IMG/VR virus record: IMGVR_UViG_3300050821_002957
Span: 186,001-250,000 of that record
Length of the DNA: 64,000 nucleotides
Strand: one strand, 5' to 3'
Shown here: in pieces, positions 8,940 through 59,627 of the stretch
How the letters are laid out: each line of letters starts with the position of its first letter
Position numbering within the stretch: position 1 is the first letter of the stretch
Translations under genes and position numbers: made by a program
Notes under the pieces: model-generated
Seen by the model: the letters and a program-made list of their open reading frames with translations, nothing else
Database searches by the model: none
What the model was told of the DNA's origin: nothing

Positions 8940-9197
8940 ATGAATAACATTTTGCTGAACGATCCTGACACATTCATTCAATGGCGCAAAACCGATGAAC
9001 CCGGCGATAATCCAAAGTGGGAATCGCAGTGTGGTTATATCGAACAAACCAGCTTCGGGGATCGTCCAATATTCCAAGGATTTGTCGGCCCCAACCAAAC
9101 ACCCACTCAGACAAAGACCAGTCTAATTTCAATCAAACAAGAAGTCGAGCGGCTGTTTAAAAAGAATTATCAACTGACCTGGGCTTATCAAGATTAG
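8940..9197 (+). CDS. Hypothetical protein
   Basis: ORF downstream of TTGACA 8905. Confidence 0.6.
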   Translation: MNNILLNDPDTFIQWRKTDEPGDNPKWESQCGYIEQTSFGDRPIFQGFVGPNQTPTQTKTSLISIKQEVERLFKKNYQLTWAYQD

Positions 9198-12100
9198 GTC
9201 GGAATAAACATAGCGTTTTGATTGCGCTCATAAGATGTATCAGTGTTCTTTGCACGTAGGTCACCAGTATGAGTACTGTTATTGTTAGTGATCTTTGTGG
9301 TCTGTGGTGCAATGATCTGATGTCCGGTTCCTGATTGTCCTGACGTTCTGTTCAATTCAGAATTTACCGCTGAGACTTGTGCCAATTGAACACCAGTGCT
9401 TTCAGGAGACAATTTCGGTGTATCAAGTCTAGGAGCAGCAGTATTTGTAGCTGTGGCAACCATTGCAGGCATTGACGTTGCTGTTGGTCGATCTACAGGC
9501 TTTGGACTACGTGATAAAGCTGTCACCACATTCTTTTGATTAGCTACGTTCTTGATTGTATCGCCGTAACCTCTAGCCGTGGCATACTTCGCTCCCATGT
9601 TCTCAATGAACTTGTTTACATCTCCAGTCTTTTGATATTCGGCAAAGGCAGCGGCATACGGACCCTTTGGATTAGATAGGAGTTTTGCGTGAGCTATGAA
9701 ACCTTCTTCCATAGTCTTGTAATCGGCAAACTCTCTCTTGACTGAAAATCTTTTTTTGCCTGACCAACCCATCTTCAAAGGAGAGCCATCCAACTCTGTT
9801 GCTGTAGCTGCTTCTTTCGGTTTTGATTTTTGAAATTGAGCGAATTCAGCGGGAGTCATGTCTTCCTGGGTCGTTCTAGTCTGACTCATCGTATCGCTTT
9901 TTGATTTGGTGACTCCAAATGCATTGTTACCAATCGAATGCTTACCCCAACCAGATTCTACGGCCCATTGTGCAATTGTTACTTGAGCCGGAACACCAGT
10001 TGCTTTTTCTGCATCCATTGCCATCTGTGCGATTTCTGGTGGAACTTCGCCCTGCTTGTACTTGATGTTTTTGTTCTGTGTTCCGCCACCTGTTCCAAGA
10101 ATACCGATACCTGAACCACCAGCCGCCGTGACACCAGAAGATTGTGGCTGTGGCGTTGCAGGTGTCGGTGAGGTTGGTGAAGATGTCGGCGCAACTGTTT
10201 TCGTCTGTGTTGGCGATGTTGTCGGAGTGTGAAAGCTACGAGCAGTCTTTGCCAATTCAGGTGTAGATGAAATTGGAGTAGCAGGAGGCGGATTCAATCC
10301 TCTACGTGGCGTTACAGTATTTTGTGTCTGTTGGGTCGGAGCAGGCGCAGCACTAGGAGCCGGTGCTGAAGTAGTTGGTGCAGGCTTGGCTGTTTCTGCT
10401 GTCTTCTTACCGCCGCCAAATGGATGTAGAATTGAATTGATCTTATCAGAAATCCAATCAATGACAGATTTGATAGCATCGGTTACTGACTGCAAGGCAT
10501 CTGTCAAAATTTTGGTGTTTTGTGGGCCAATAATGTTTTCGACCATCTTCTTGATCGAATCGAAAACACTGGAGAAGGCCGTACTGATACTTGCAAACGC
10601 TTTGGTGATGGTCTCCATACCAGGGATCTTCATGATCTCTTGACCAAAGTTTTCAAATGATTTTGTGAATGCCTCGATTACCTTATCCAATGCATCTTTG
10701 ATGGTATCGAGATTGAACATCGTCAAGAACCATTTGCCAAGCGCACTGAACATTCCCAGTACACCATCTTTCAGTTCTTCTATTCCTTTGTCGAATGTCT
10801 TAGGATCAGACAAATCGGACAGACCATCGATGAACTTTGACAGTCCTTCAAAAAAGTCGCCGATGATCTCAATCATCTTGCCAAGACGTTTTGCGACAAA
10901 CTCCAGGATCGGTCCCAGAACTTTGAAGATTGGTTTGGATGCCACATAGAGAGCACTCAAAATGGAACCAATTGCTTTGAAAATGCTGGCAAACGATTTT
11001 GCGCTGGTCTTTCCAAGTGTCTTTCCAATTTCTGTTTTGACACCTGCCAATCCGAGCACGAAATCAATAATTCCGAACAGACCTTCGACCACGCCGCCTA
11101 AACCACCAGCGACCCGATCCATCATCGTCAATTTCTTTTTGTCTCCAAGATACTTTTCTGCGTGCATGAATGCCGGGATGAAATCGAAGATAGCAGTGAT
11201 TGCCATAATGACTTCGCCGACAACTGGAATGAAATCTAGGAATTCAGCCATTCGACCTGCGCCACCCAAGAGTTTTGCGCCCTTGAGCATCTCGCCGCCT
11301 TCGGCCAGGAGCTTAGTACCACCCTTTGCACCTGCTTCAGCACCTTCCCCGACTGCCTTTCCAACCTCTCCCAGACCCTTTGCGCCGTCCTCTACGGCTT
11401 CGATGCCGCTTGCCGCACCCTCAACACCCCTTCCAGCCCCAGAAGCGCCCTTGCCTCGTCCAAACCAGCGCTTGAACATGCCTCCTTCTTCAGCTTCAGC
11501 CCCACCTTTAGCAGTTTTGTTGCCGAGACCCAGCCACTTTCCAATTTTGCCGCCAAACAACCGTCCGATTCCGGCTTCAATGCCAGACATGAGACCGCCG
11601 AGCAAACCGCCCTTTTTCCCACCTGATTTTTTGGCGACATCAGCAAGCAATCCACCAGCATCGCCATCGGTTGTTTCCCGACGCTTTGCGTTCGCATCCA
11701 ATTCGGATTGATCTAGTTGCTTTGCAAGCAATTTGTTGATTTCTTTTAGTTCAATCAACTGCTCTTCGTCTAATTTTGCGACTCTCGAAAGCGGACCTTC
11801 TTTGTCGCTGGTAAGAATGCTCAATTTTTTGTCTTGATCTTTTTGGACACCTTCCATGAGCTTGAGCAAACCTGCGGTATTACTTTGGCTCGCCAGTTTT
11901 TCAGGATGTAATGTCGGTTCATCCAAATCCATACGCCCGTTTTGAACAAGCTCTGGAGCCGCCGCCTTTTTCAATTGTGGTGGTGCTTCAAATTTTTCTA
12001 CGTTTGGCATCGCATGAACAGCAGCAGTCATCATTGCTTTGACTGGACTGTTGTACGGATTTTTCATGCGCTCCGCTTCTTGCTTTTCCATATGGGCTAA

Positions 12101-13486
12101 AGCAGTCGGTTTCGGATGAGATTCTTCACCAAAAATTTCCGGCCAATCTGGTGTGCCTGAAGGCTTTTTTAAACTATCTTCATGCTTCTTTTGTAATAGA
12201 CCTTTACCATGCTTTCTGATGGACTCTAACCATGCATCACGTTCATCTAACTCTTGCTGCTTCTTTGGTGTGCTCTTCTGATAACCTGCCCAATCAGGAA
12301 TTGCATTACCCAAGTGATCCCGAACCAATTGCTGAGGAGCCGAGGACACAGATGGTCCGTGAGCTACTGCGGTCGGAGACGTTGATCCTATTGTTTGAAG
12401 TGGTGACTGAGATACTGGTGTTGACTGTCCTTGAGAACCAGCGGCACGTTCCCATAAAGGTTGATAATCAGGGCGCAACAATTCAGCACGCAAATTCTGA
12501 TGCTGTTCTGTGCTGATCTTACCCTTAGCGTGCAAATTTTCAAGAGCGGAGTGGCGAACATCTTCGTCTTTGATTTTTCCAAGATGTTCCTTTACGGTAT
12601 CATGATCATGTTTGACATCAGCATCGTCAAGCATCGGTTCATCCGGGCGTGGTAATACTTTTTTGATGTCACCGACTTTGAATTGATTAGCTTTTGTTTT
12701 CTGACGTGCTTCTCGACGATCACGCATTTTTTCGAGAATATACTTGGTAGCTAAACCGACAATCGGAGAGTGACCAGCCAAACCAGAGATGACACTGACT
12801 GCATCAATATTTTGCTTCTGTAAGAACGAACCCATTTTACCGAGCAAACCTGTACGCTGACGTGTCTCTTGCTCCAATGCCTTTTGTAGATTAAGAGTGG
12901 CATTAGTGAGAATCTTATTTTCGGTGCCGACAGTGCTGAATCGAACACTCTCTTGAATATCAGAGAGCTTTTTCTTTGCTCCTTCCAGTTCGTCCTTGCT
13001 GTACGTATGGTACTCGGACGCCATGCTATCAATATTTTCAGCGTGGCGTTTTCCTGCATCGGAATACACATTACCACGTCGTTGCTTAATCAGCTTTTCT
13101 TTGTCTTTCTTTTTTTGAAGCGCAGTAAGTTGATCGACGACTTTTTTGGTAGATGCTTCGACCTGACGAATCTTCTCGAAATCGTCATCATTGTTGTTGC
13201 CACCAGTAGACTTTCTTGGAGACCTTGGACGACTGCCACCGCCACCTGAAGACGAGTTACGAGGAGCAGATCCACCGCCGCCACCTGAAGACACGTTGCC
13301 ATCCTTTAACATGTCTGCTAGGTCTTCGGCTGCGTTTTCAGTGGCCTGTTGAAATACCTGATGGATTTTGGTCGTCAGCTTCTTGGACAGATCATCTAAG
13401 AGATCTTCTTTGTCCACAAGCGTCAGATTTGAAACATCAATCTGATTCAGGTCTACCCCGTTTTTTGTTGTCTTCTTGGATGGCAT
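9194..13486 (-). CDS. Baseplate hub / tail length determinant (gp29-like) with C-terminal GH73 (FlgJ-like) peptidoglycan hydrolase
   Basis: 1430 aa; Gly-rich and amphipathic repeats; AQWAVESGWG..NNAFG..YAT motifs; C-terminal APxT..NNNST; follows 26 and 51. Confidence 0.8.
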   Translation of the reverse strand: MPSKKTTKNGVDLNQIDVSNLTLVDKEDLLDDLSKKLTTKIHQVFQQATENAAEDLADMLKDGNVSSGGGGGSAPRNSSSGGGGSRPRSPRKSTGGNNNDDDFEKIRQVEASTKKVVDQLTALQKKKDKEKLIKQRRGNVYSDAGKRHAENIDSMASEYHTYSKDELEGAKKKLSDIQESVRFSTVGTENKILTNATLNLQKALEQETRQRTGLLGKMGSFLQKQNIDAVSVISGLAGHSPIVGLATKYILEKMRDRREARQKTKANQFKVGDIKKVLPRPDEPMLDDADVKHDHDTVKEHLGKIKDEDVRHSALENLHAKGKISTEQHQNLRAELLRPDYQPLWERAAGSQGQSTPVSQSPLQTIGSTSPTAVAHGPSVSSAPQQLVRDHLGNAIPDWAGYQKSTPKKQQELDERDAWLESIRKHGKGLLQKKHEDSLKKPSGTPDWPEIFGEESHPKPTALAHMEKQEAERMKNPYNSPVKAMMTAAVHAMPNVEKFEAPPQLKKAAAPELVQNGRMDLDEPTLHPEKLASQSNTAGLLKLMEGVQKDQDKKLSILTSDKEGPLSRVAKLDEEQLIELKEINKLLAKQLDQSELDANAKRRETTDGDAGGLLADVAKKSGGKKGGLLGGLMSGIEAGIGRLFGGKIGKWLGLGNKTAKGGAEAEEGGMFKRWFGRGKGASGAGRGVEGAASGIEAVEDGAKGLGEVGKAVGEGAEAGAKGGTKLLAEGGEMLKGAKLLGGAGRMAEFLDFIPVVGEVIMAITAIFDFIPAFMHAEKYLGDKKKLTMMDRVAGGLGGVVEGLFGIIDFVLGLAGVKTEIGKTLGKTSAKSFASIFKAIGSILSALYVASKPIFKVLGPILEFVAKRLGKMIEIIGDFFEGLSKFIDGLSDLSDPKTFDKGIEELKDGVLGMFSALGKWFLTMFNLDTIKDALDKVIEAFTKSFENFGQEIMKIPGMETITKAFASISTAFSSVFDSIKKMVENIIGPQNTKILTDALQSVTDAIKSVIDWISDKINSILHPFGGGKKTAETAKPAPTTSAPAPSAAPAPTQQTQNTVTPRRGLNPPPATPISSTPELAKTARSFHTPTTSPTQTKTVAPTSSPTSPTPATPQPQSSGVTAAGGSGIGILGTGGGTQNKNIKYKQGEVPPEIAQMAMDAEKATGVPAQVTIAQWAVESGWGKHSIGNNAFGVTKSKSDTMSQTRTTQEDMTPAEFAQFQKSKPKEAATATELDGSPLKMGWSGKKRFSVKREFADYKTMEEGFIAHAKLLSNPKGPYAAAFAEYQKTGDVNKFIENMGAKYATARGYGDTIKNVANQKNVVTALSRSPKPVDRPTATSMPAMVATATNTAAPRLDTPKLSPESTGVQLAQVSAVNSELNRTSGQSGTGHQIIAPQTTKITNNNSTHTGDLRAKNTDTSYERNQNAMFIPT

Positions 13487-55240: not shown

Positions 55241-55359
55241 GATCGGCTGACCACATGAAGTGCGGCCACCAGCCATAGTGAGACTTTCGGACTATCAAAT
55301 AGCCTCCACGAGTCAACCAACGGCCTATGGAAAATATAAGGCAATTCGACATTAGTGAT

Positions 55360-56247
55360 TCAATAGCGGTTATGATGATCGTATCTGTTTCTGGTGGCTT
55401 TTTGATACGCCTTAGCTACATCCGTACTAAATCCATGATCACGAGCAACAATGTGTTGAGAACCGTCTGGATGCTCAAAGACGCCTAAGTTTTTCTTCTG
55501 GTGATAGTCGTTCGGTGAGTGCCCAGTATTGCCGTGATAGTCCTGAAATTTCTGAACAAGTGGATGCTGATTCAGACGATGATGTTCTGCTTCTTGCTCA
55601 GACGTTCCTGAGTAATGTCTACCGTTGTTCTGGTCGTGGTTGTGGACCAAGGTATTGACAAACTGTTTGTGATTGATACCTTTTGGAAACTCTTTGTTCT
55701 TGGTCAGCTTTTGAAACTCTCCAGGCTTGATGTCTCGCACATGGCCGACGTGAGACCATTCATGTTTTTCGTGGTCATGATCAATCAATGGAGGAAAGAT
55801 GCCGCTTTCTTTGTTTGAACTGTAATGATTTGATCCTTTCTCCGGTTCGTAGCGAAGAATACGATAGTTTCCGTTCACCCAATGATCGCCACCTTCTGCG
55901 TGGTTTTGCATGGCACCCAGGCTCATTCCGTCGTGTTCTGAGGCTTTGTGATGCTTGTCGAGTGCGGCTCTGATGGCAACTTTTGTTCCAGAATGGATGT
56001 GTGCATCTTTGCCGTCAAGAACAATGTGATGCGGTGTGTCATGTTTCAAATAGGCTCTGGACGAACCTTTGGGCATGTTACCTTCGATGCCAGTCTTCTG
56101 TCCGCTGTTGGTCAATTGTTTGATCTTTTTTGCGAGCAGGCTTTGCTTTGGCGCATACGAATTTGAAGACGTAACAATCGACCGGAGTTCAGGATGAAGC
56201 TCTTCGACGATTACATTGTGGATGAAGTCTTTAAAATTGACCAGCAT
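55360..56247 (-). CDS. His-rich atypical protein kinase-like protein, putative internal head protein
   Basis: GSSRAY, KVA, QNHAE, DYHQKKNLG, IVARDHGF in kinase order; late leaderless; NFKDFI..VEE N-terminus. Confidence 0.65.
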   Translation of the reverse strand: MLVNFKDFIHNVIVEELHPELRSIVTSSNSYAPKQSLLAKKIKQLTNSGQKTGIEGNMPKGSSRAYLKHDTPHHIVLDGKDAHIHSGTKVAIRAALDKHHKASEHDGMSLGAMQNHAEGGDHWVNGNYRILRYEPEKGSNHYSSNKESGIFPPLIDHDHEKHEWSHVGHVRDIKPGEFQKLTKNKEFPKGINHKQFVNTLVHNHDQNNGRHYSGTSEQEAEHHRLNQHPLVQKFQDYHGNTGHSPNDYHQKKNLGVFEHPDGSQHIVARDHGFSTDVAKAYQKATRNRYDHHNRY

Positions 56248-56256
56248 GTCCAGTAT

Positions 56257-56511
56257 TTAGTCGAACAAACTGGCCTGATGAATCTTGGACAAATGCTTTT
56301 CTAAATTGGTGGGAGTCTTGCCGCCTTTCTTCTTCGCTGAGTGTGTCCATCCTGCGTCAGAGACGGTCGCTGTGTGGTCGAGACGAGGATGGGTATACTT
56401 GGTGACCCCGGACTCATTCGACGCCTTCTGATAGCCGTAATTGCGGAGCACAGCCTGGACTTTCTTGCTCGATTTGGACTCGGCGATCAGAAATTCGCTG
56501 AAGGATTGCAT
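56257..56511 (-). CDS. Putative internal head protein (MQSFSEFLIAE)
   Basis: Late promoter 5 nt before ATG; capsid-targeting-like N-terminus. Confidence 0.65.
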   Translation of the reverse strand: MQSFSEFLIAESKSSKKVQAVLRNYGYQKASNESGVTKYTHPRLDHTATVSDAGWTHSAKKKGGKTPTNLEKHLSKIHQASLFD

Positions 56512-56539
56512 GACTGTATTTAGCTGTATAGATATCCAT

Positions 56540-56978: not shown

Positions 56979-56988
56979 TGAAATATTT

Positions 56989-57531
56989 ATGAGCTATTCG
57001 TACAAATTCAAAACCAACATCTATTATGACAAAATTGCAAAGGACTTGGCCGGAAGCGAGATTGGCGATGTCACGCAATTTCTGAACGAACTTGCAGAGG
57101 CATTGAAAGCTCGCCATACGCCGGAAGAAGATCAGGTGATTGTGATGCTGCCTGAAGATGCATTCTTTGGAACACTGGCGTTAGGTATTCAGGATGCAAT
57201 CACAAATGCCCAAGAGAAGGTCAAAGAGAACACTCGTATTGCCTTTGCCCAGCCGACACATGAACAAATTGAAGAGAAGATCAAAGAACTGCTTAACGGT
57301 GGTACTGATACATCGGTCGATATTCCATTTGATCCTGATTTGGTGGCGCTTCCTCTTGAAATGCGACGGGCTGAACAGATGAGTGGCATTAAGAGCAATC
57401 CAATTGAATGCCGATCTGATCTTTCAAGAGAAGAGCACATCAAACGAACCACCGATACGCTTCTTAGGAATACAGAAATAATGCTAGGCGACAAACAATA
57501 CAGAAAGCAAATGGGTGATCCTACCGTTTAG
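56989..57531 (+). CDS. Hypothetical protein
   Basis: 180-aa ORF. Confidence 0.6.
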   Translation: MSYSYKFKTNIYYDKIAKDLAGSEIGDVTQFLNELAEALKARHTPEEDQVIVMLPEDAFFGTLALGIQDAITNAQEKVKENTRIAFAQPTHEQIEEKIKELLNGGTDTSVDIPFDPDLVALPLEMRRAEQMSGIKSNPIECRSDLSREEHIKRTTDTLLRNTEIMLGDKQYRKQMGDPTV

Positions 57532-58265: not shown

Positions 58266-58733
58266 TCATTGCTGTAATTTTTTGTATGCATCTCGTGCAG
58301 GCATGATACCTTCCCGACCGAGTTCTTTCATGGCTCGTGCGTTCTTATAAGATTTACCACCGTTCTTTGGGCGCTTGTAGACACCTGCGCTACCTGAGAC
58401 AGTCACTTCATCATTGTGGTCTGGTTTCATGAAATGTAGAGCTTTGAGTGCTGTCGCTTTGCCCTTTGGATGAGTAGCATCATAATGGACAAAGTGATGA
58501 AAACCGTGAATGCTGCTTACGTTCGCTCCGAATCTTGTGAAACCCTTTGCTTGAGCATCTTGAACAGAATCACCCTGTTTGCCGCCAGCTTTTATATAAT
58601 CGGGATGATGATTGGCATAGTGTTCTCCATGATGACTGAACAAATGTGCTTCACCAGACGGACTCATCCATCCTCTCATGGCTTTTTCTGGTTGCCACGA
58701 TTCGTTGATGAATTGGATAAAGGTCAGTAGCAT
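58266..58733 (-). CDS. His-rich putative internal head protein (MLLTFIQFINE)
   Basis: Capsid-targeting-like N-terminus; GWMSPSG..H motif. Confidence 0.6.
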   Translation of the reverse strand: MLLTFIQFINESWQPEKAMRGWMSPSGEAHLFSHHGEHYANHHPDYIKAGGKQGDSVQDAQAKGFTRFGANVSSIHGFHHFVHYDATHPKGKATALKALHFMKPDHNDEVTVSGSAGVYKRPKNGGKSYKNARAMKELGREGIMPARDAYKKLQQ

Positions 58734-59311
58734 TACTCTTCCGGTTTATAGTCTTCCTTCGGATGCGTTGCGTGGAAGACCGGCGCTTTCTTTGTTCCCA
58801 TGCCTTTCACACGCTCGACATGATGAAAACGCTTTGCCAATTCGTGATGAACATGATCGGCATCGATGTCATGAGCTTTGCGTGGAGACTCGGGGAAGTT
58901 GCCGGTGAATGCGCCACCTTTGTGAGTCGCCTTGTGAATTTGATCCAGCGTGTGACCCATCATCTTTTTGTTCGACTGGACGTTCAGAACATTAGATGCG
59001 TACACATGATGATACTTCTTGTCTAGTGCATGAGGATCGTGAACGCCGGGTTTCTGGTTGCTTCCAAATTCGTGTGCTGTGACGTTGTGACCTTTTTCAC
59101 GAAGGCGCTTTGCGTGCGCTGCTTCGTGGCCTGCACCGAAATCGAGAAGATGGCGACCTGCCTTGTCGTTGTGTTTAGCTTCGACAGCTTCGACGTGACG
59201 AGGCACCAGGGCCTTTGCGCCGACTGCACCAGCCGCACGAGAAGTGCTGTTGGCGATTTTCTTTTCTTCGTCGCTAAATTCGAGCAGCCAGTTGGTAAAG
59301 GACTTCATCAT
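58733..59311 (-). CDS. His-rich class I SAM-dependent methyltransferase-like protein, putative internal head protein
   Basis: LLDFGAG motif I, VTAHE motif II, YHHVYASNVLNV; late leaderless; KSFTNWLLE N-terminus. Confidence 0.7.
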   Translation of the reverse strand: MMKSFTNWLLEFSDEEKKIANSTSRAAGAVGAKALVPRHVEAVEAKHNDKAGRHLLDFGAGHEAAHAKRLREKGHNVTAHEFGSNQKPGVHDPHALDKKYHHVYASNVLNVQSNKKMMGHTLDQIHKATHKGGAFTGNFPESPRKAHDIDADHVHHELAKRFHHVERVKGMGTKKAPVFHATHPKEDYKPEE

Positions 59312-59627
59312 GCCAGTATTTAGCTGGCTTTGACTCCTACTTCCTTCAACTTACGAGGACGGCCTGCTTTGCGTCCCTTTACACGGTCGTACACACTGCG
59401 CTTGTGACTGTATCTGCGGCTACGAAAGATTTTATAGGCACGCTGAGTCAAAGTTTCGTCTTCTTTCATTTTAACACTCTCGATTGGAGTAGCGAAAATA
59501 TTGACCGGGCCGCAGCCTGTAAATTCGTATCCACAGTGTTCGCAGCCGAGACACGGTTCATTCACACAAACACCCGGCGAAAGTTTCTTTGGTTTATCGT
59601 TTGAAAGTTGAAATGCCATGACGGTAT

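What the first reader, a model, noticed from the sequence alone, without database searches (positions are those of the whole stretch)
55360..56259. Kinase-like protein that appears addressed to the capsid interior
Seen: motifs in protein-kinase order, namely GSSRAY (Gly loop), KVA (beta-3 Lys), QNHAE (helix C Glu), DYHQKKN (catalytic D and N) and RDHGF (DFG equivalent). It has a late leaderless promoter, the N-terminus MLVNFKDFIHNVIVEE, and is very His-rich. Known: T4 internal proteins use MKTYQEFIAE, are cut by gp21 after Glu and are injected with the DNA; the T7 gp0.7 kinase is made early, not packaged. Inference: a pre-packaged kinase that could phosphorylate host defence proteins before any phage gene is expressed.
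Basis: partly seen in the sequence, partly recalled or inferred. Interest (0 to 1): 0.78.

Follow-up and report, generated by a model that had tools for sequence, protein, structure and literature searches.

The report
Capsid-addressed kinase-like phage protein
A 405-kb T4-like soil phage encodes a protein from an unnamed, phage-only family that has a minimal protein-kinase-like fold, a T4-style late promoter and an N-terminal tag like the one T4 uses to load proteins into its head, so it is probably an enzyme injected with the DNA.

Summary

- **T4-like phage.** The phage has homologues of the major capsid protein gp23, the prohead protease gp21 and the late sigma factor gp55.
- **Late promoter.** CTAAATA lies 6 nt before the ATG. 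Genome-wide, this late-promoter motif sits 5-6 nt before the ATG of some 33 ORFs, including portal and neck genes, which implies leaderless late mRNAs.
- **Capsid tag.** The N-terminus resembles the T4 IPI presequence and ends in I-V-E, a gp21-type cleavage motif. This is conserved across the family. Unrelated proteins in this genome carry similar tags, including an Acb1 fusion whose relatives start almost exactly like T4 IPIII.

A packaged kinase-like enzyme is therefore plausible. Packaging, catalysis and substrate remain untested.

The parts
56254..56260 (-). CTAAATA, a T4-type late promoter element (the Aeh1-like variant)
   Evidence: Read directly. Genome-wide, the same motif sits 5-9 nt before the ATG of 45 ORFs, including portal gp20 and a neck protein. 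The genome has a gp55 homologue. The literature places TATAAATA at -13..-6 and the Aeh1 variant CTAAATA from -12 (PMC1524935).
56248..56253 (-). 6-nt spacer (CTGGAC) between the promoter element and the ATG. The predicted transcription start is at 56248 or 56247, so the mRNA is leaderless or has a 1-nt leader.
   Evidence: Sequence. The spacing rule comes from PMC1524935. No Shine-Dalgarno sequence can fit in 6 nt. This is inferred, not measured.
55360..56247 (-). ORF of 295 aa (stop codon included), belonging to an unnamed phage-only kinase-like family
   Evidence: ORF. It has 297 homologues at E<=0.01 and 148 clusters at 50% identity in an exhaustive HMM search. There is no Pfam or PHROG hit. 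AlphaFold models reach pLDDT 84.6 and 92.6.
56203..56247 (-). Codons 1-15 (MLVNFKDFIHNVIVE): a putative capsid-targeting presequence ending in I-V-E, a gp21-type L/I-x-E cleavage motif
   Evidence: 146 of 189 full-length relatives start with aromatic-x-x-aromatic-aliphatic. 143 of 149 have [LIVMAF]-x-E-(x) directly before the LHPEL anchor. Real T4 IPI starts MKTFKEF and ends its presequence in ITE; IPII and IPIII start MKTYQEFIAE. The cleavage rule and the targeting residues 4 and 7 are from PMC9026906. Model confidence is low here (pLDDT 38-55 for residues 1-10).
56050..56067 (-). GSSRAY (residues 61-66): a phosphate-loop-like turn leading into the strand at 64-69. It is not a canonical GxGxxG loop.
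   Evidence: R64 is invariant and G61, S62 and S63 are conserved at >=90%.
55981..55983 (-). K89, the candidate beta-3 ATP-binding lysine
   Evidence: Invariant in 51 divergent sequences. It lies in the strand at 86-91.
55894..55908 (-). QNHAE (residues 114-118), with E118 as the candidate alpha-C glutamate
   Evidence: Q114 is invariant; N115 and E118 are conserved at >=90%. The segment lies in the helix at 110-119.
55489..55509 (-). DYHQKKN (residues 247-253), the candidate catalytic loop with its Asp and Asn
   Evidence: D247 is invariant and N253 is conserved at >=90%. Most of the family has D-x4-N, and this subgroup has one extra residue. The segment lies between the helix at 229-241 and the strand at 254-258, which is where the catalytic loop sits in PKL folds.
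55429..55443 (-). RDHGF (residues 269-273), the candidate Mg-binding DxG (DFG equivalent)
   Evidence: D270 and G272 are invariant. The segment comes directly after the strand at 264-268. The ends of the structural alignments to ULK1, EphA2, PLK4, CDK6, Rio1 and PRPK place D270 on their DFG Asp. The target residue numbers are from memory.
56257..56511 (-). Upstream neighbour: an 84-aa basic protein starting MQSFSEFLIAE, with its own CTAAATA 5 nt before the ATG. It is a candidate small internal head protein.
   Evidence: The N-terminus compares with T4 IPII/IPIII, MKTYQEFIAE.
58266..58733 (-). 155-aa His-rich (8.4%) protein starting MLLTFIQFINE, with a tag-like N-terminus
   Evidence: No Pfam or PHROG hit.
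58733..59311 (-). 192-aa protein starting MMKSFTNWLLE, the most His-rich in the genome (11.5%). It has a weak SAM-methyltransferase match and CTAAATA 5 nt before its ATG.
   Evidence: Methyltransf_23 matches at E 9.5e-5, below the curated cut-off.

Best explanation
The ORF encodes a member of an undescribed, phage-restricted family of minimal protein-kinase-like (PKL) enzymes. These resemble Rio, Bud32/PRPK and APH in having little substrate-binding C-lobe after the DxG.

**Proposed sequence of events:**
1. The gene is transcribed late from a gp55-type promoter (CTAAATA) as a leaderless or nearly leaderless mRNA.
2. The first ~15 residues act like the T4 capsid-targeting sequence and bring the protein into the scaffolding core of the prohead.
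3. The gp21-family prohead protease cuts after the I-V-E motif (E15).
4. The mature ~32-kDa enzyme stays in the head with the DNA and is injected at the next infection.
5. It then uses host ATP to phosphorylate host, or possibly phage, targets before any phage gene is expressed. This would be functionally parallel to packaged T4 Alt and to the early T7 kinase.

**Shown here:** the ORF, family conservation of the catalytic-type residues, a PKL-like predicted fold, the promoter motif and its genome-wide spacing, the presence of gp21, gp23 and gp55 homologues, and conservation of the N-terminal tag with its [ILV]-x-E end.

**Inferred:** packaging, cleavage, injection, ATP use and protein substrates.
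For: **Fold**
- Models reach pLDDT 84.6 and 92.6.
- The Foldseek PDB top 50 are all PKL. The best hit is Rio1 at E 1.4e-3, probability 0.90-0.95.
- AFDB clusters and Swiss-Prot return kinase, BUD32, RIO, APH and choline kinase families.
- In a Foldseek-independent search of 48,161 chains, 47 of the top 50 are PKL.

**Catalytic set**
- K89, D247, D270 and G272 are invariant; E118 and N253 are at >=90% at 24% mean identity.
- Each sits in the expected secondary-structure element.

**Late expression**
- Promoter motif statistics.
- The portal and neck genes carry the same motif.
- The genome has a gp55 homologue.
- 15 of 38 relatives have TAAATA within 45 nt upstream.

**Targeting**
- gp21 protease E 1.4e-38 and gp23 E 2.3e-141.
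- The presequence is conserved across the family.
- It is similar to the real T4 IPI, IPII and IPIII presequences.
- A tag-like N-terminus occurs in 6 of 740 ORFs, against 0.23 expected.
- Relatives of the Acb1 fusion start with a near-verbatim T4 tag, MKTYVEFIAE.
- The MCP carries L-M-E before the region that aligns with mature gp23.

**Other**
- Sequence from the gene is present in a soil metatranscriptome.
- Functional precedent: the T7 kinase disarms defences (PMC13645617), and T4 internal proteins are anti-defence cargo (PMC3012670).
Against: - No sequence or profile method ties the family to kinases.
- The Gly-rich loop is not canonical.
- This protein's D-to-N spacing is +6.
- The target's tag is longer than, and less like, MKTYQEFIAE than the tags of its neighbours.
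- The N-terminal pattern used for the enrichment test was defined after seeing the cases.
- Internal L/I-x-E sites are not significantly depleted.
- No cultured phage has a homologue, so no virion proteome exists.
- The RNA-library contigs could be DNA carry-over.
- Nothing addresses the substrate.
Confidence: 0.5

Rival explanations
1. It is a packaged PKL-fold enzyme, but not a protein kinase. It would phosphorylate a small molecule or a nucleic-acid end, or act mainly as an ATPase as Rio and Bud32 do. Candidate substrates include a host metabolite, a nucleotide immune signal or RNA/DNA 5'-OH.
For: - The fullest structural coverage is to small-molecule kinases: APH(2'') aligns over model residues 6-295, and homoserine, streptomycin and choline kinases also appear.
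- Minimal archaeal RNA kinases (Ark1) are among the hits.
- Only one helix follows the DxG, so there is no activation segment or peptide-binding lobe.
- Neighbouring tagged proteins look like small-molecule or nucleic-acid enzymes: Acb1 and a methyltransferase-like protein.
Against: - Rio, PRPK, PINK1 and other eukaryotic-type protein kinases score as well or better.
- Minimal kinases such as HopBF1 do phosphorylate proteins (hit).
- No substrate pocket could be examined.
Confidence: 0.2
2. It is a late-expressed PKL enzyme that is not packaged. The conserved N-terminal segment would be part of the protein's own structure or regulation, and the enzyme would act inside the producing cell late in infection.
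For: - The target's N-terminus deviates from the T4 10-mer.
- In the better model, residues 11-30 have pLDDT 77-84, so they may pack on the core.
- Strong conservation of a segment also fits a structural role.
- Internal cleavage-motif depletion is not significant.
Against: - Residues 1-10 are poorly ordered.
- The linker between the aromatic motif and the [ILV]-x-E site varies in length while both ends stay conserved.
- The same tag heads unrelated proteins in this genome and in relatives.
- The family is found with gp21 and gp23 on the longer contigs.
Confidence: 0.2
3. It is a catalytically inert, His-rich internal head protein, a pseudokinase scaffold or DNA-associated filler with no enzymatic role.
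For: - It has extreme His content and a basic pI of 9.0, shared with adjacent tagged proteins.
- T4 internal proteins include non-enzymatic basic proteins.
Against: - The invariant residues are exactly the catalytic-type Lys, Asp, Asp and Gly, whereas most His are not conserved beyond the close subfamily.
- Pseudokinases usually lose these residues.
Confidence: 0.05
4. It is not a kinase-like fold at all. The PKL resemblance would be a common alpha/beta arrangement picked up by weak structural matches to a large PDB family.
For: - Kinases are over-represented in the PDB.
- A PDB profile search gave only spurious weak hits, cGAS at E 0.29.
Against: - 47 of the top 50 in a redundancy-reduced, Foldseek-independent search are PKL.
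- Hits span many unrelated kinase families.
- Invariant residues fall in the right elements in the right order.
- SAICAR synthase is itself a fold relative of PKL (my own knowledge).
Confidence: 0.05

Closest known systems
T4 internal proteins IPI, IPII, IPIII and Alt (capsid-targeting sequence cargo)
   Same: - An N-terminal presequence with aromatic residues three apart, followed by an aliphatic residue and ending in L/I-x-E.
- A gp21-family protease in the genome.
- A gene located away from the head module, among other tagged genes.
- As with Alt, the cargo would be an enzyme that modifies targets on arrival.
   Different: - There is no sequence relation in the mature part.
- The presequence is 15-16 aa, closer to the 19-aa IPI type than to the 10-aa IPII/IPIII type.
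- The aromatics are at positions 5 and 8 rather than 4 and 7.
- The enzyme is kinase-like, not an ADP-ribosyltransferase or a nuclease inhibitor.
- Packaging is not demonstrated.
T7 gp0.7 protein kinase (T7K)
   Same: Both are phage-encoded kinase-type enzymes with a non-canonical DFG position (DPV in T7K, DHG here). T7K is shown to disarm defence systems by phosphorylation (PMC13645617).
   Different: - There is no detectable homology: no PHROG hit and hhalign probability 0.2.
- T7K is early and not packaged; this gene has a late promoter and a head tag.
- It has no C-terminal shut-off or DNA-binding domain.
Rio1/Rio2 and Bud32/PRPK atypical kinases
   Same: - They are the best structural matches.
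- N-terminal helices precede the N-lobe.
- The C-lobe is minimal and ends soon after the metal-binding Asp.
- Most of the family has a D-x4-N catalytic loop.
   Different: - The Rio and Bud32 signature sequences are absent.
- There is an extra beta-hairpin at residues 73-84, with an invariant D78-G79 turn.
- An insert of about 80 residues lies between the N-lobe and the catalytic loop.
- The family is found only in phages.
APH-type small-molecule kinases (APH(2''), choline, homoserine and streptomycin kinases)
   Same: They give full-length structural alignment (model residues 6-295) and share the Lys, D-x4-N and Asp arrangement.
   Different: There is no Pfam APH hit and no profile match to E. 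coli SrkA. The helical substrate-binding subdomain after the DxG is missing.

Membership tests
Protein kinase-like (PKL) superfamily | Bilobal fold: an N-lobe beta-sheet with helix C and a C-lobe carrying the catalytic loop | tested here: met
Protein kinase-like (PKL) superfamily | Invariant Lys in beta-3, paired with a Glu in helix C | tested here: met
   K89 is invariant and lies in the strand at 86-91. E118 is conserved at >=90% and lies in the helix at 110-119. The salt bridge itself could not be measured because no coordinates were available.
Protein kinase-like (PKL) superfamily | Catalytic loop Asp followed by Asn five residues later, then a metal-binding Asp (DFG/DxG) after two short strands | tested here: met
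   D247 is invariant and N253 is conserved at >=90%. The spacing is +5 in most of the family and +6 in this protein. Strands at 254-258 and 264-268 are followed by invariant D270-x-G272.
Protein kinase-like (PKL) superfamily | Gly-rich GxGxxG phosphate loop | tested here: not met
   Only GSSR (residues 61-64) precedes the strand at 64-69. It is conserved but not canonical. Many atypical PKL families also lack the canonical loop (my own knowledge).
Protein kinase-like (PKL) superfamily | Sequence or profile match to a curated kinase family | tested here: not met
   No Pfam, PHROG or PDB profile hit was found. One of 51 members gives a weak Alpha_kinase hit at E 0.037. HHpred against full libraries could not be run.
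Protein kinase-like (PKL) superfamily | ATP-dependent phosphotransfer | not testable with these tools
   The co-folding job with ATP and Mg was not folded by the tool and gives no evidence either way.
T4-type capsid-targeting-sequence cargo | N-terminal presequence with targeting aromatics (T4 positions 4 and 7) and an aliphatic residue next to the second aromatic | tested here: met
   F5, F8 and I9 are present here. 146 of 189 relatives have the pattern. The real T4 sequences were read, and the determinants are from PMC9026906. The register is shifted by one residue.
T4-type capsid-targeting-sequence cargo | L/I-x-E cleavage motif at the end of the presequence | tested here: met
   I13-V14-E15 is the only [LI]-x-E in the protein. 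143 of 149 relatives have [LIVMAF]-x-E-(x) directly before the conserved LHPEL.
T4-type capsid-targeting-sequence cargo | gp21-family (Peptidase_S77) prohead protease and a T4-type head in the same phage | tested here: met
   PF03420 matches at E 1.4e-38 and PF07068 at E 2.3e-141. Two of five partial contigs from relatives carry both.
T4-type capsid-targeting-sequence cargo | Made while proheads assemble (late transcription) | tested here: met
   The CTAAATA late motif lies 6 nt before the ATG. The portal and neck genes carry the same motif, and a gp55 homologue is present. This is in silico only.
T4-type capsid-targeting-sequence cargo | Physically present in virions with a processed N-terminus, and injected | not testable with these tools
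   No cultured phage has a homologue, so no proteome is available.
T7 gp0.7 (T7K) kinase family | Sequence homology to the T7K kinase domain, with the DPV motif | tested here: not met
   hhalign of the family profile against T7 gp0.7 gives probability 0.2 and E 0.28. There is no PHROG hit. The motif here is DHG.
Rio / Bud32 atypical kinases | Family signature sequences and Pfam RIO1 / Kinase-like membership | tested here: not met
   They are the best structural neighbours, but there is no Pfam hit even at E<=10 for 36 members and E<=5 for 51 members.

The most novel reading that the evidence does not exclude
T4-like soil phages may pre-load their heads with a set of enzymes. All would carry the T4 capsid-targeting tag and be delivered with the DNA to act before any transcription. 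The set would include this kinase-like protein, an Acb1 (anti-CBASS) fusion, a SprT-like protease and a methyltransferase-like protein. The kinase-like family would then be the first virion-packaged kinase described in a bacteriophage.
Probability: 0.4. Interest if true: 0.85.

Novelty: new variant of a known kind. Interest (0 to 1): 0.72.

Why it matters
**What is already known.** T4 internal proteins are injected anti-defence cargo. The T7 kinase has recently been shown to disarm many defence systems by phosphorylation.

**What this would add.** A kinase-type enzyme carrying the head-loading tag would join these two ideas. It would be a catalytic counter-defence or host-takeover activity that is already present when the DNA enters, with no need for early gene expression.

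**Why it is testable.** The family has about 150 clusters at 50% identity, has no Pfam or PHROG model, and occurs in uncultured T4-like phages. It therefore offers a compact new PKL scaffold. It also provides a direct test case: the tag can be tried in T4 itself.

**Wider questions it opens.** The same genome suggests that Acb1 and other enzymes may also be packaged, and that late genes are translated from leaderless mRNAs. Both points bear on how large T4-like phages organise infection.

Tried and rejected
- **Co-folding with ATP and Mg.** The tool did not fold it, so it gives no evidence.
- **ESM Atlas look-alikes.** No kinase lead came up. The Atlas's own model of the protein is poor. A weak 'IpIV internal head protein' neighbour (score 0.50-0.62) is below any useful threshold.
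- **Profile against PDB sequences.** There was nothing at E<=10 with the close alignment. The divergent alignment gave only a cGAS segment at E 0.29. I considered a nucleotidyltransferase reading and rejected it: there is no D-x-D after the GS, and the fold hits are all kinases.
- **hhalign of the family against T7 gp0.7 and E. coli SrkA.** Neither was significant.
- **Pfam on 36 and 51 members at loose thresholds.** No recurring family appeared. There was one Alpha_kinase hit at E 0.037.
- **Pfam on ten longer multi-domain relatives.** No fused domains gave a functional hint.
- **Depletion of internal L/I-x-E sites in tagged proteins.** The count was 6 against about 9.6 expected (P 0.16), which is not informative.
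- **Sigma-70 promoter and terminator scan around the gene.** Nothing rose above shuffled controls.
- **BLASTP among the tagged and His-rich proteins.** They are not paralogues, so the shared N-terminus is not due to common descent of whole proteins.
- **tblastn against 50,697 cultured phage records.** There was no homologue, so published virion proteomes cannot be used.
Full report
**1. The observation**

The minus-strand ORF at 55360-56247 encodes 295 aa.
- GSSRAY at residues 61-66
- KVA at 89-91
- QNHAE at 114-118
- DYHQKKN at 247-253
- RDHGF at 269-273
- the N-terminus MLVNFKDFIHNVIVEE

His content is 11.2%. That ranks second of 631 ORFs of at least 60 aa in the genome, where the mean is 2.5%.

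On the minus strand, CTAAATA (56260-56254) is followed by CTGGAC and then the ATG. The TAA inside this motif is the stop codon of the preceding 84-aa ORF.

**2. The genome**

- The window is bases 186001-250000 of a single 405,631-bp IMG/VR virus record.
- It encodes a T4-type major capsid protein (PF07068, E 2.3e-141), a gp21-type prohead protease (Peptidase_S77, E 1.4e-38), a T4-type portal, a neck protein and a homologue of the late sigma factor gp55.
- The capsid protein is 61-63% identical to those of Pelagibacter phage HTVC008M, Methylophilales phage Melnitz and Synechococcus phage S-SKS1.
- The DNA is held by soil metagenome runs.

**3. The family**

- Pfam and PHROGs give nothing for the protein.
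- A word-indexed search finds 297 metagenomic relatives, all unnamed or 'hypothetical'.
- An exhaustive profile search of 1.84 billion representatives finds only 148 clusters at 50% identity. No cultured phage has a homologue.
- In IMG/VR, 40 viral contigs carry a relative. Of five long but partial contigs, two carry both gp21 and gp23, and a third shows a sub-threshold gp23 fragment at its end.
- This is therefore a small family of uncultured T4-like phages.

**4. Kinase-like or not**

*Conservation.* I aligned 51 divergent members (24% mean column identity).
- Nine columns are invariant: R64, D78, K89, G111, Q114, D247, G255, D270 and G272.
- G61, S62, S63, N115, E118, N253 and a few others are conserved at >=90%.
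- Most members have D-x4-N, the canonical spacing. This protein's subgroup has one extra residue.

*Structure prediction.* Two AlphaFold models were made, from the close and from the divergent alignment. They reached pLDDT 84.6 / pTM 0.78 and pLDDT 92.6 / pTM 0.88, with the same topology. The conserved residues map as follows:
- K89 lies in the strand at 86-91.
- E118 lies in the helix at 110-119.
- D247 to N253 follow the helix at 229-241.
- Two short strands (254-258 and 264-268) come next, followed immediately by D270-H-G272.
- This is the arrangement of the catalytic loop, beta-7, beta-8 and DFG in PKL folds (my own knowledge of the fold).

*Fold searches.*
- The Foldseek PDB top 50 are all PKL proteins with both models. 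The best hit is A. fulgidus Rio1 at E 1.4e-3, probability up to 0.95.
- AFDB clusters return hits dominated by kinase-like families, and Swiss-Prot returns only PKL kinases: BUD32, RIO, APH, choline and homoserine kinases.
- The Foldseek-independent search of 48,161 representative chains puts PKL proteins at 47 of the top 50 places. Two SAICAR synthetases and one spurious local match fill the rest.
- The ends of many alignments (ULK1, EphA2, PLK4, CDK6, Rio1, PRPK) are consistent with D270 lying on their DFG Asp. The target residue numbers are from my memory, so this point is indicative only.

*Against.*
- TM-scores are 0.2-0.36, and Z never reaches 8. The tool notes that this level is common for models without true relatives.
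- No sequence-profile test connects the family to any kinase family.
- The phosphate loop is not GxGxxG.

*Verdict on the fold.* I read this as a real but very remote PKL fold of the minimal type, like Rio, Bud32 and HopBF1. It has a complete catalytic set, an extra hairpin at residues 73-84 and an insert of about 80 residues. I put about 0.8 on 'PKL-fold phosphotransferase or ATPase'.

**5. Late and leaderless**

- The literature places the T4 late promoter TATAAATA at -13 to -6. In Aeromonas phage Aeh1 the consensus is CTAAATA, starting at -12 (PMC1524935).
- In this genome, 45 of the 152 NTAAATA occurrences lie 4-9 nt before the ATG of an ORF of at least 40 aa. The peak is 25 cases at exactly 5 nt and 8 at 6 nt.
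- Against my gene list, TAAATA occurs 34 times at that spacing, compared with 0-9 times for each of 14 permuted hexamers.
- The portal and neck genes are among the genes carrying the motif.
- A 5-nt spacer puts +1 on the A of the ATG. The 6-nt spacer here puts it on that A or the base before it.
- Only 22% of ORFs have a Shine-Dalgarno-like motif.
- Among relatives, 15 of 38 have TAAATA within 45 nt upstream. It mostly lies 23-31 nt away, with an SD-like leader. Late expression looks conserved, but the leaderless layout does not.
- A soil metatranscriptome holds 100%-identical contigs over the 3' end of this gene and over the 192-aa tagged gene. DNA carry-over cannot be excluded.

**6. The head tag**

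*The T4 reference.*
- The T4 record gives IPII and IPIII as MKTYQEFIAE, followed by Ala.
- It gives IPI as MKTFKEF, then TSTTTPVST, then ITE, followed by Ala.
- The review PMC9026906 states that gp21 cuts after L/I-x-E. It also states that residues 4 and 7 of the tag carry targeting and residues 8 and 10 carry processing.

*The target.*
- The target has F5, F8 and I9, followed by I13-V14-E15. That is the only [LI]-x-E in the protein.
- Among relatives, 146 of 189 start with the aromatic-x-x-aromatic-aliphatic pattern.
- 143 of 149 have [LIVMAF]-x-E-(x) directly before the conserved LHPEL.
- The stretch between these two ends varies in length.
- Some relatives read MKSFKQFI... or MKTFKQFL..., very close to T4 IPI.
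- Residues 1-10 are the least confident part of both models.

*The same tag on other proteins in this genome.* None of these proteins is related to another beyond the tag.
- MQSFSEFLIAE: the 84-aa ORF directly upstream.
- MLLTFIQFINE: 155 aa.
- MMKSFTNWLLE: 192 aa, methyltransferase-like.
- MKTFLEFILTE: 134 aa.
- MKTFAQFMTE: 303 aa, with an Acb1 domain at E 5.3e-22.
- MLKFQQWLAE: 356 aa, SprT-like at E 3.5e-11, lying next to the capsid gene.

*Enrichment and support from relatives.*
- A pattern for this tag matches 6 of 740 ORF starts, against 0.23 expected from internal positions. The pattern was chosen after seeing the cases, so the P value is optimistic.
- Relatives of the Acb1 fusion begin MKTYLQFITE, MKTYQQFITE and MKTYVEFIAE. 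The last is 9 of 10 identical to the T4 IPIII tag. This is the strongest sign that a T4-type tag operates in this phage group.
- The capsid protein has L-M-E directly before the segment that aligns with mature gp23. The T4 cleavage position is from memory.
- In a related 204-kb contig, the gene after the kinase-like gene starts MFSFKQFITE.

*Verdict on packaging.* I put about 0.55-0.6 on actual packaging and processing of this protein.

**7. Function**

- By analogy, a packaged kinase-type enzyme would act on arrival, as the T4 Alt ADP-ribosyltransferase does. It could disarm defences, as the T7 kinase does (PMC13645617).
- Nothing here identifies the substrate.
- The absence of a peptide-binding C-lobe leaves a non-protein substrate or an ATPase role open. 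So does the good coverage by small-molecule kinases and the appearance of the Ark1 RNA kinases among the hits.

**8. Verdict**

A kinase-like fold is likely and head addressing is plausible, but anti-defence protein phosphorylation is untested.
- The family is undescribed, with no Pfam or PHROG model and no paper found.
- It is best filed as a new variant of known kinds: T4-type tagged head cargo, and phage PKL enzymes.

Noticed in passing
G000 genome-wide; in the window at e.g. 56254-56260, 56517-56523, 56984-56990 and 59317-59323 (minus strand), and 8645 and 17386 (plus strand): The late-promoter motif NTAAATA (mostly CTAAATA) sits exactly 5 nt (25 ORFs) or 6-9 nt (19 ORFs) before the ATG. 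This implies leaderless late mRNAs in a T4-like phage. Only 22% of ORFs have a Shine-Dalgarno-like motif. Relatives keep the motif but usually with a 23-31 nt leader.
   Followed up: partly
G000:C1:369676-370587 (+), outside the window (locus L017): A 303-aa protein has an Acb1 anti-CBASS domain (E 5.3e-22) and a C-terminal part containing a DGHHR motif (ParB-like, by my own reading). It starts MKTFAQFMTE. Its 40-odd relatives start MKTY[LQV][QE]F[IL]xE, up to 9 of 10 identical to the T4 IPIII capsid-targeting sequence. This suggests a virion-packaged Acb1. I found no paper linking Acb1 with the tag.
   Followed up: partly
G000:C1:19294-20364 (-), outside the window (locus L015): A 356-aa SprT-like metalloprotease-domain protein (E 3.5e-11) starts MLKFQQWLAE. 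It lies close to the major capsid gene, separated by a 155-aa ORF, and is another tag-bearing enzyme candidate.
   Followed up: no
window 55360-56247, 58266-58733 and 58733-59311 (all minus strand): Three tag-bearing proteins in this 4-kb cluster rank 2nd, 8th and 1st for His content among 631 ORFs (11.2%, 8.4% and 11.5%, against a 2.5% mean). All have pI 9.0-9.6. Most of the His residues in the kinase-like protein are conserved only in its close subfamily. The reason for the His-richness is unexplained.
   Followed up: partly
window 58733-59311 (-): This 192-aa tagged protein has an LDFGAG-type SAM-binding motif and a sub-threshold Methyltransf_23 match (E 9.5e-5). It may be a packaged methyltransferase.
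   Followed up: no
T4 record NC_000866, gene 57B (locus L022:11953-12411, minus strand): T4's own Acb1 (57B) lies next to ipI and starts MMEFKDFSTG, which resembles the IPI presequence MKTFKEF. I did not examine whether T4 Acb1 is itself head-targeted.
   Followed up: no
locus L018:6926-8125 (+); homologue at G000:C1:259773-261326 (-): In a related 204-kb contig, the gene after the kinase-like gene encodes a His-rich GP88-domain protein that starts MFSFKQFITE. Its homologue in this genome (517 aa, 8.7% His) has a different called start.
   Followed up: no
window 55292-55623 and 58758-58990: A soil metatranscriptome run holds 100%-identical contigs over just these two stretches of the 4.6-kb region. 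One is the 3' end of the kinase-like gene and the other lies inside the 192-aa tagged gene. DNA carry-over is not excluded.
   Followed up: partly
whole record G000; window 9194-13486 (-): At 405.6 kb, the genome is about twice the size estimated from CheckV completeness for the relatives that carry the same family (roughly 180-190 kb). The window also holds a 1430-aa ORF whose only phage-database match is a lysin-like segment of a Flavobacterium phage.
   Followed up: no
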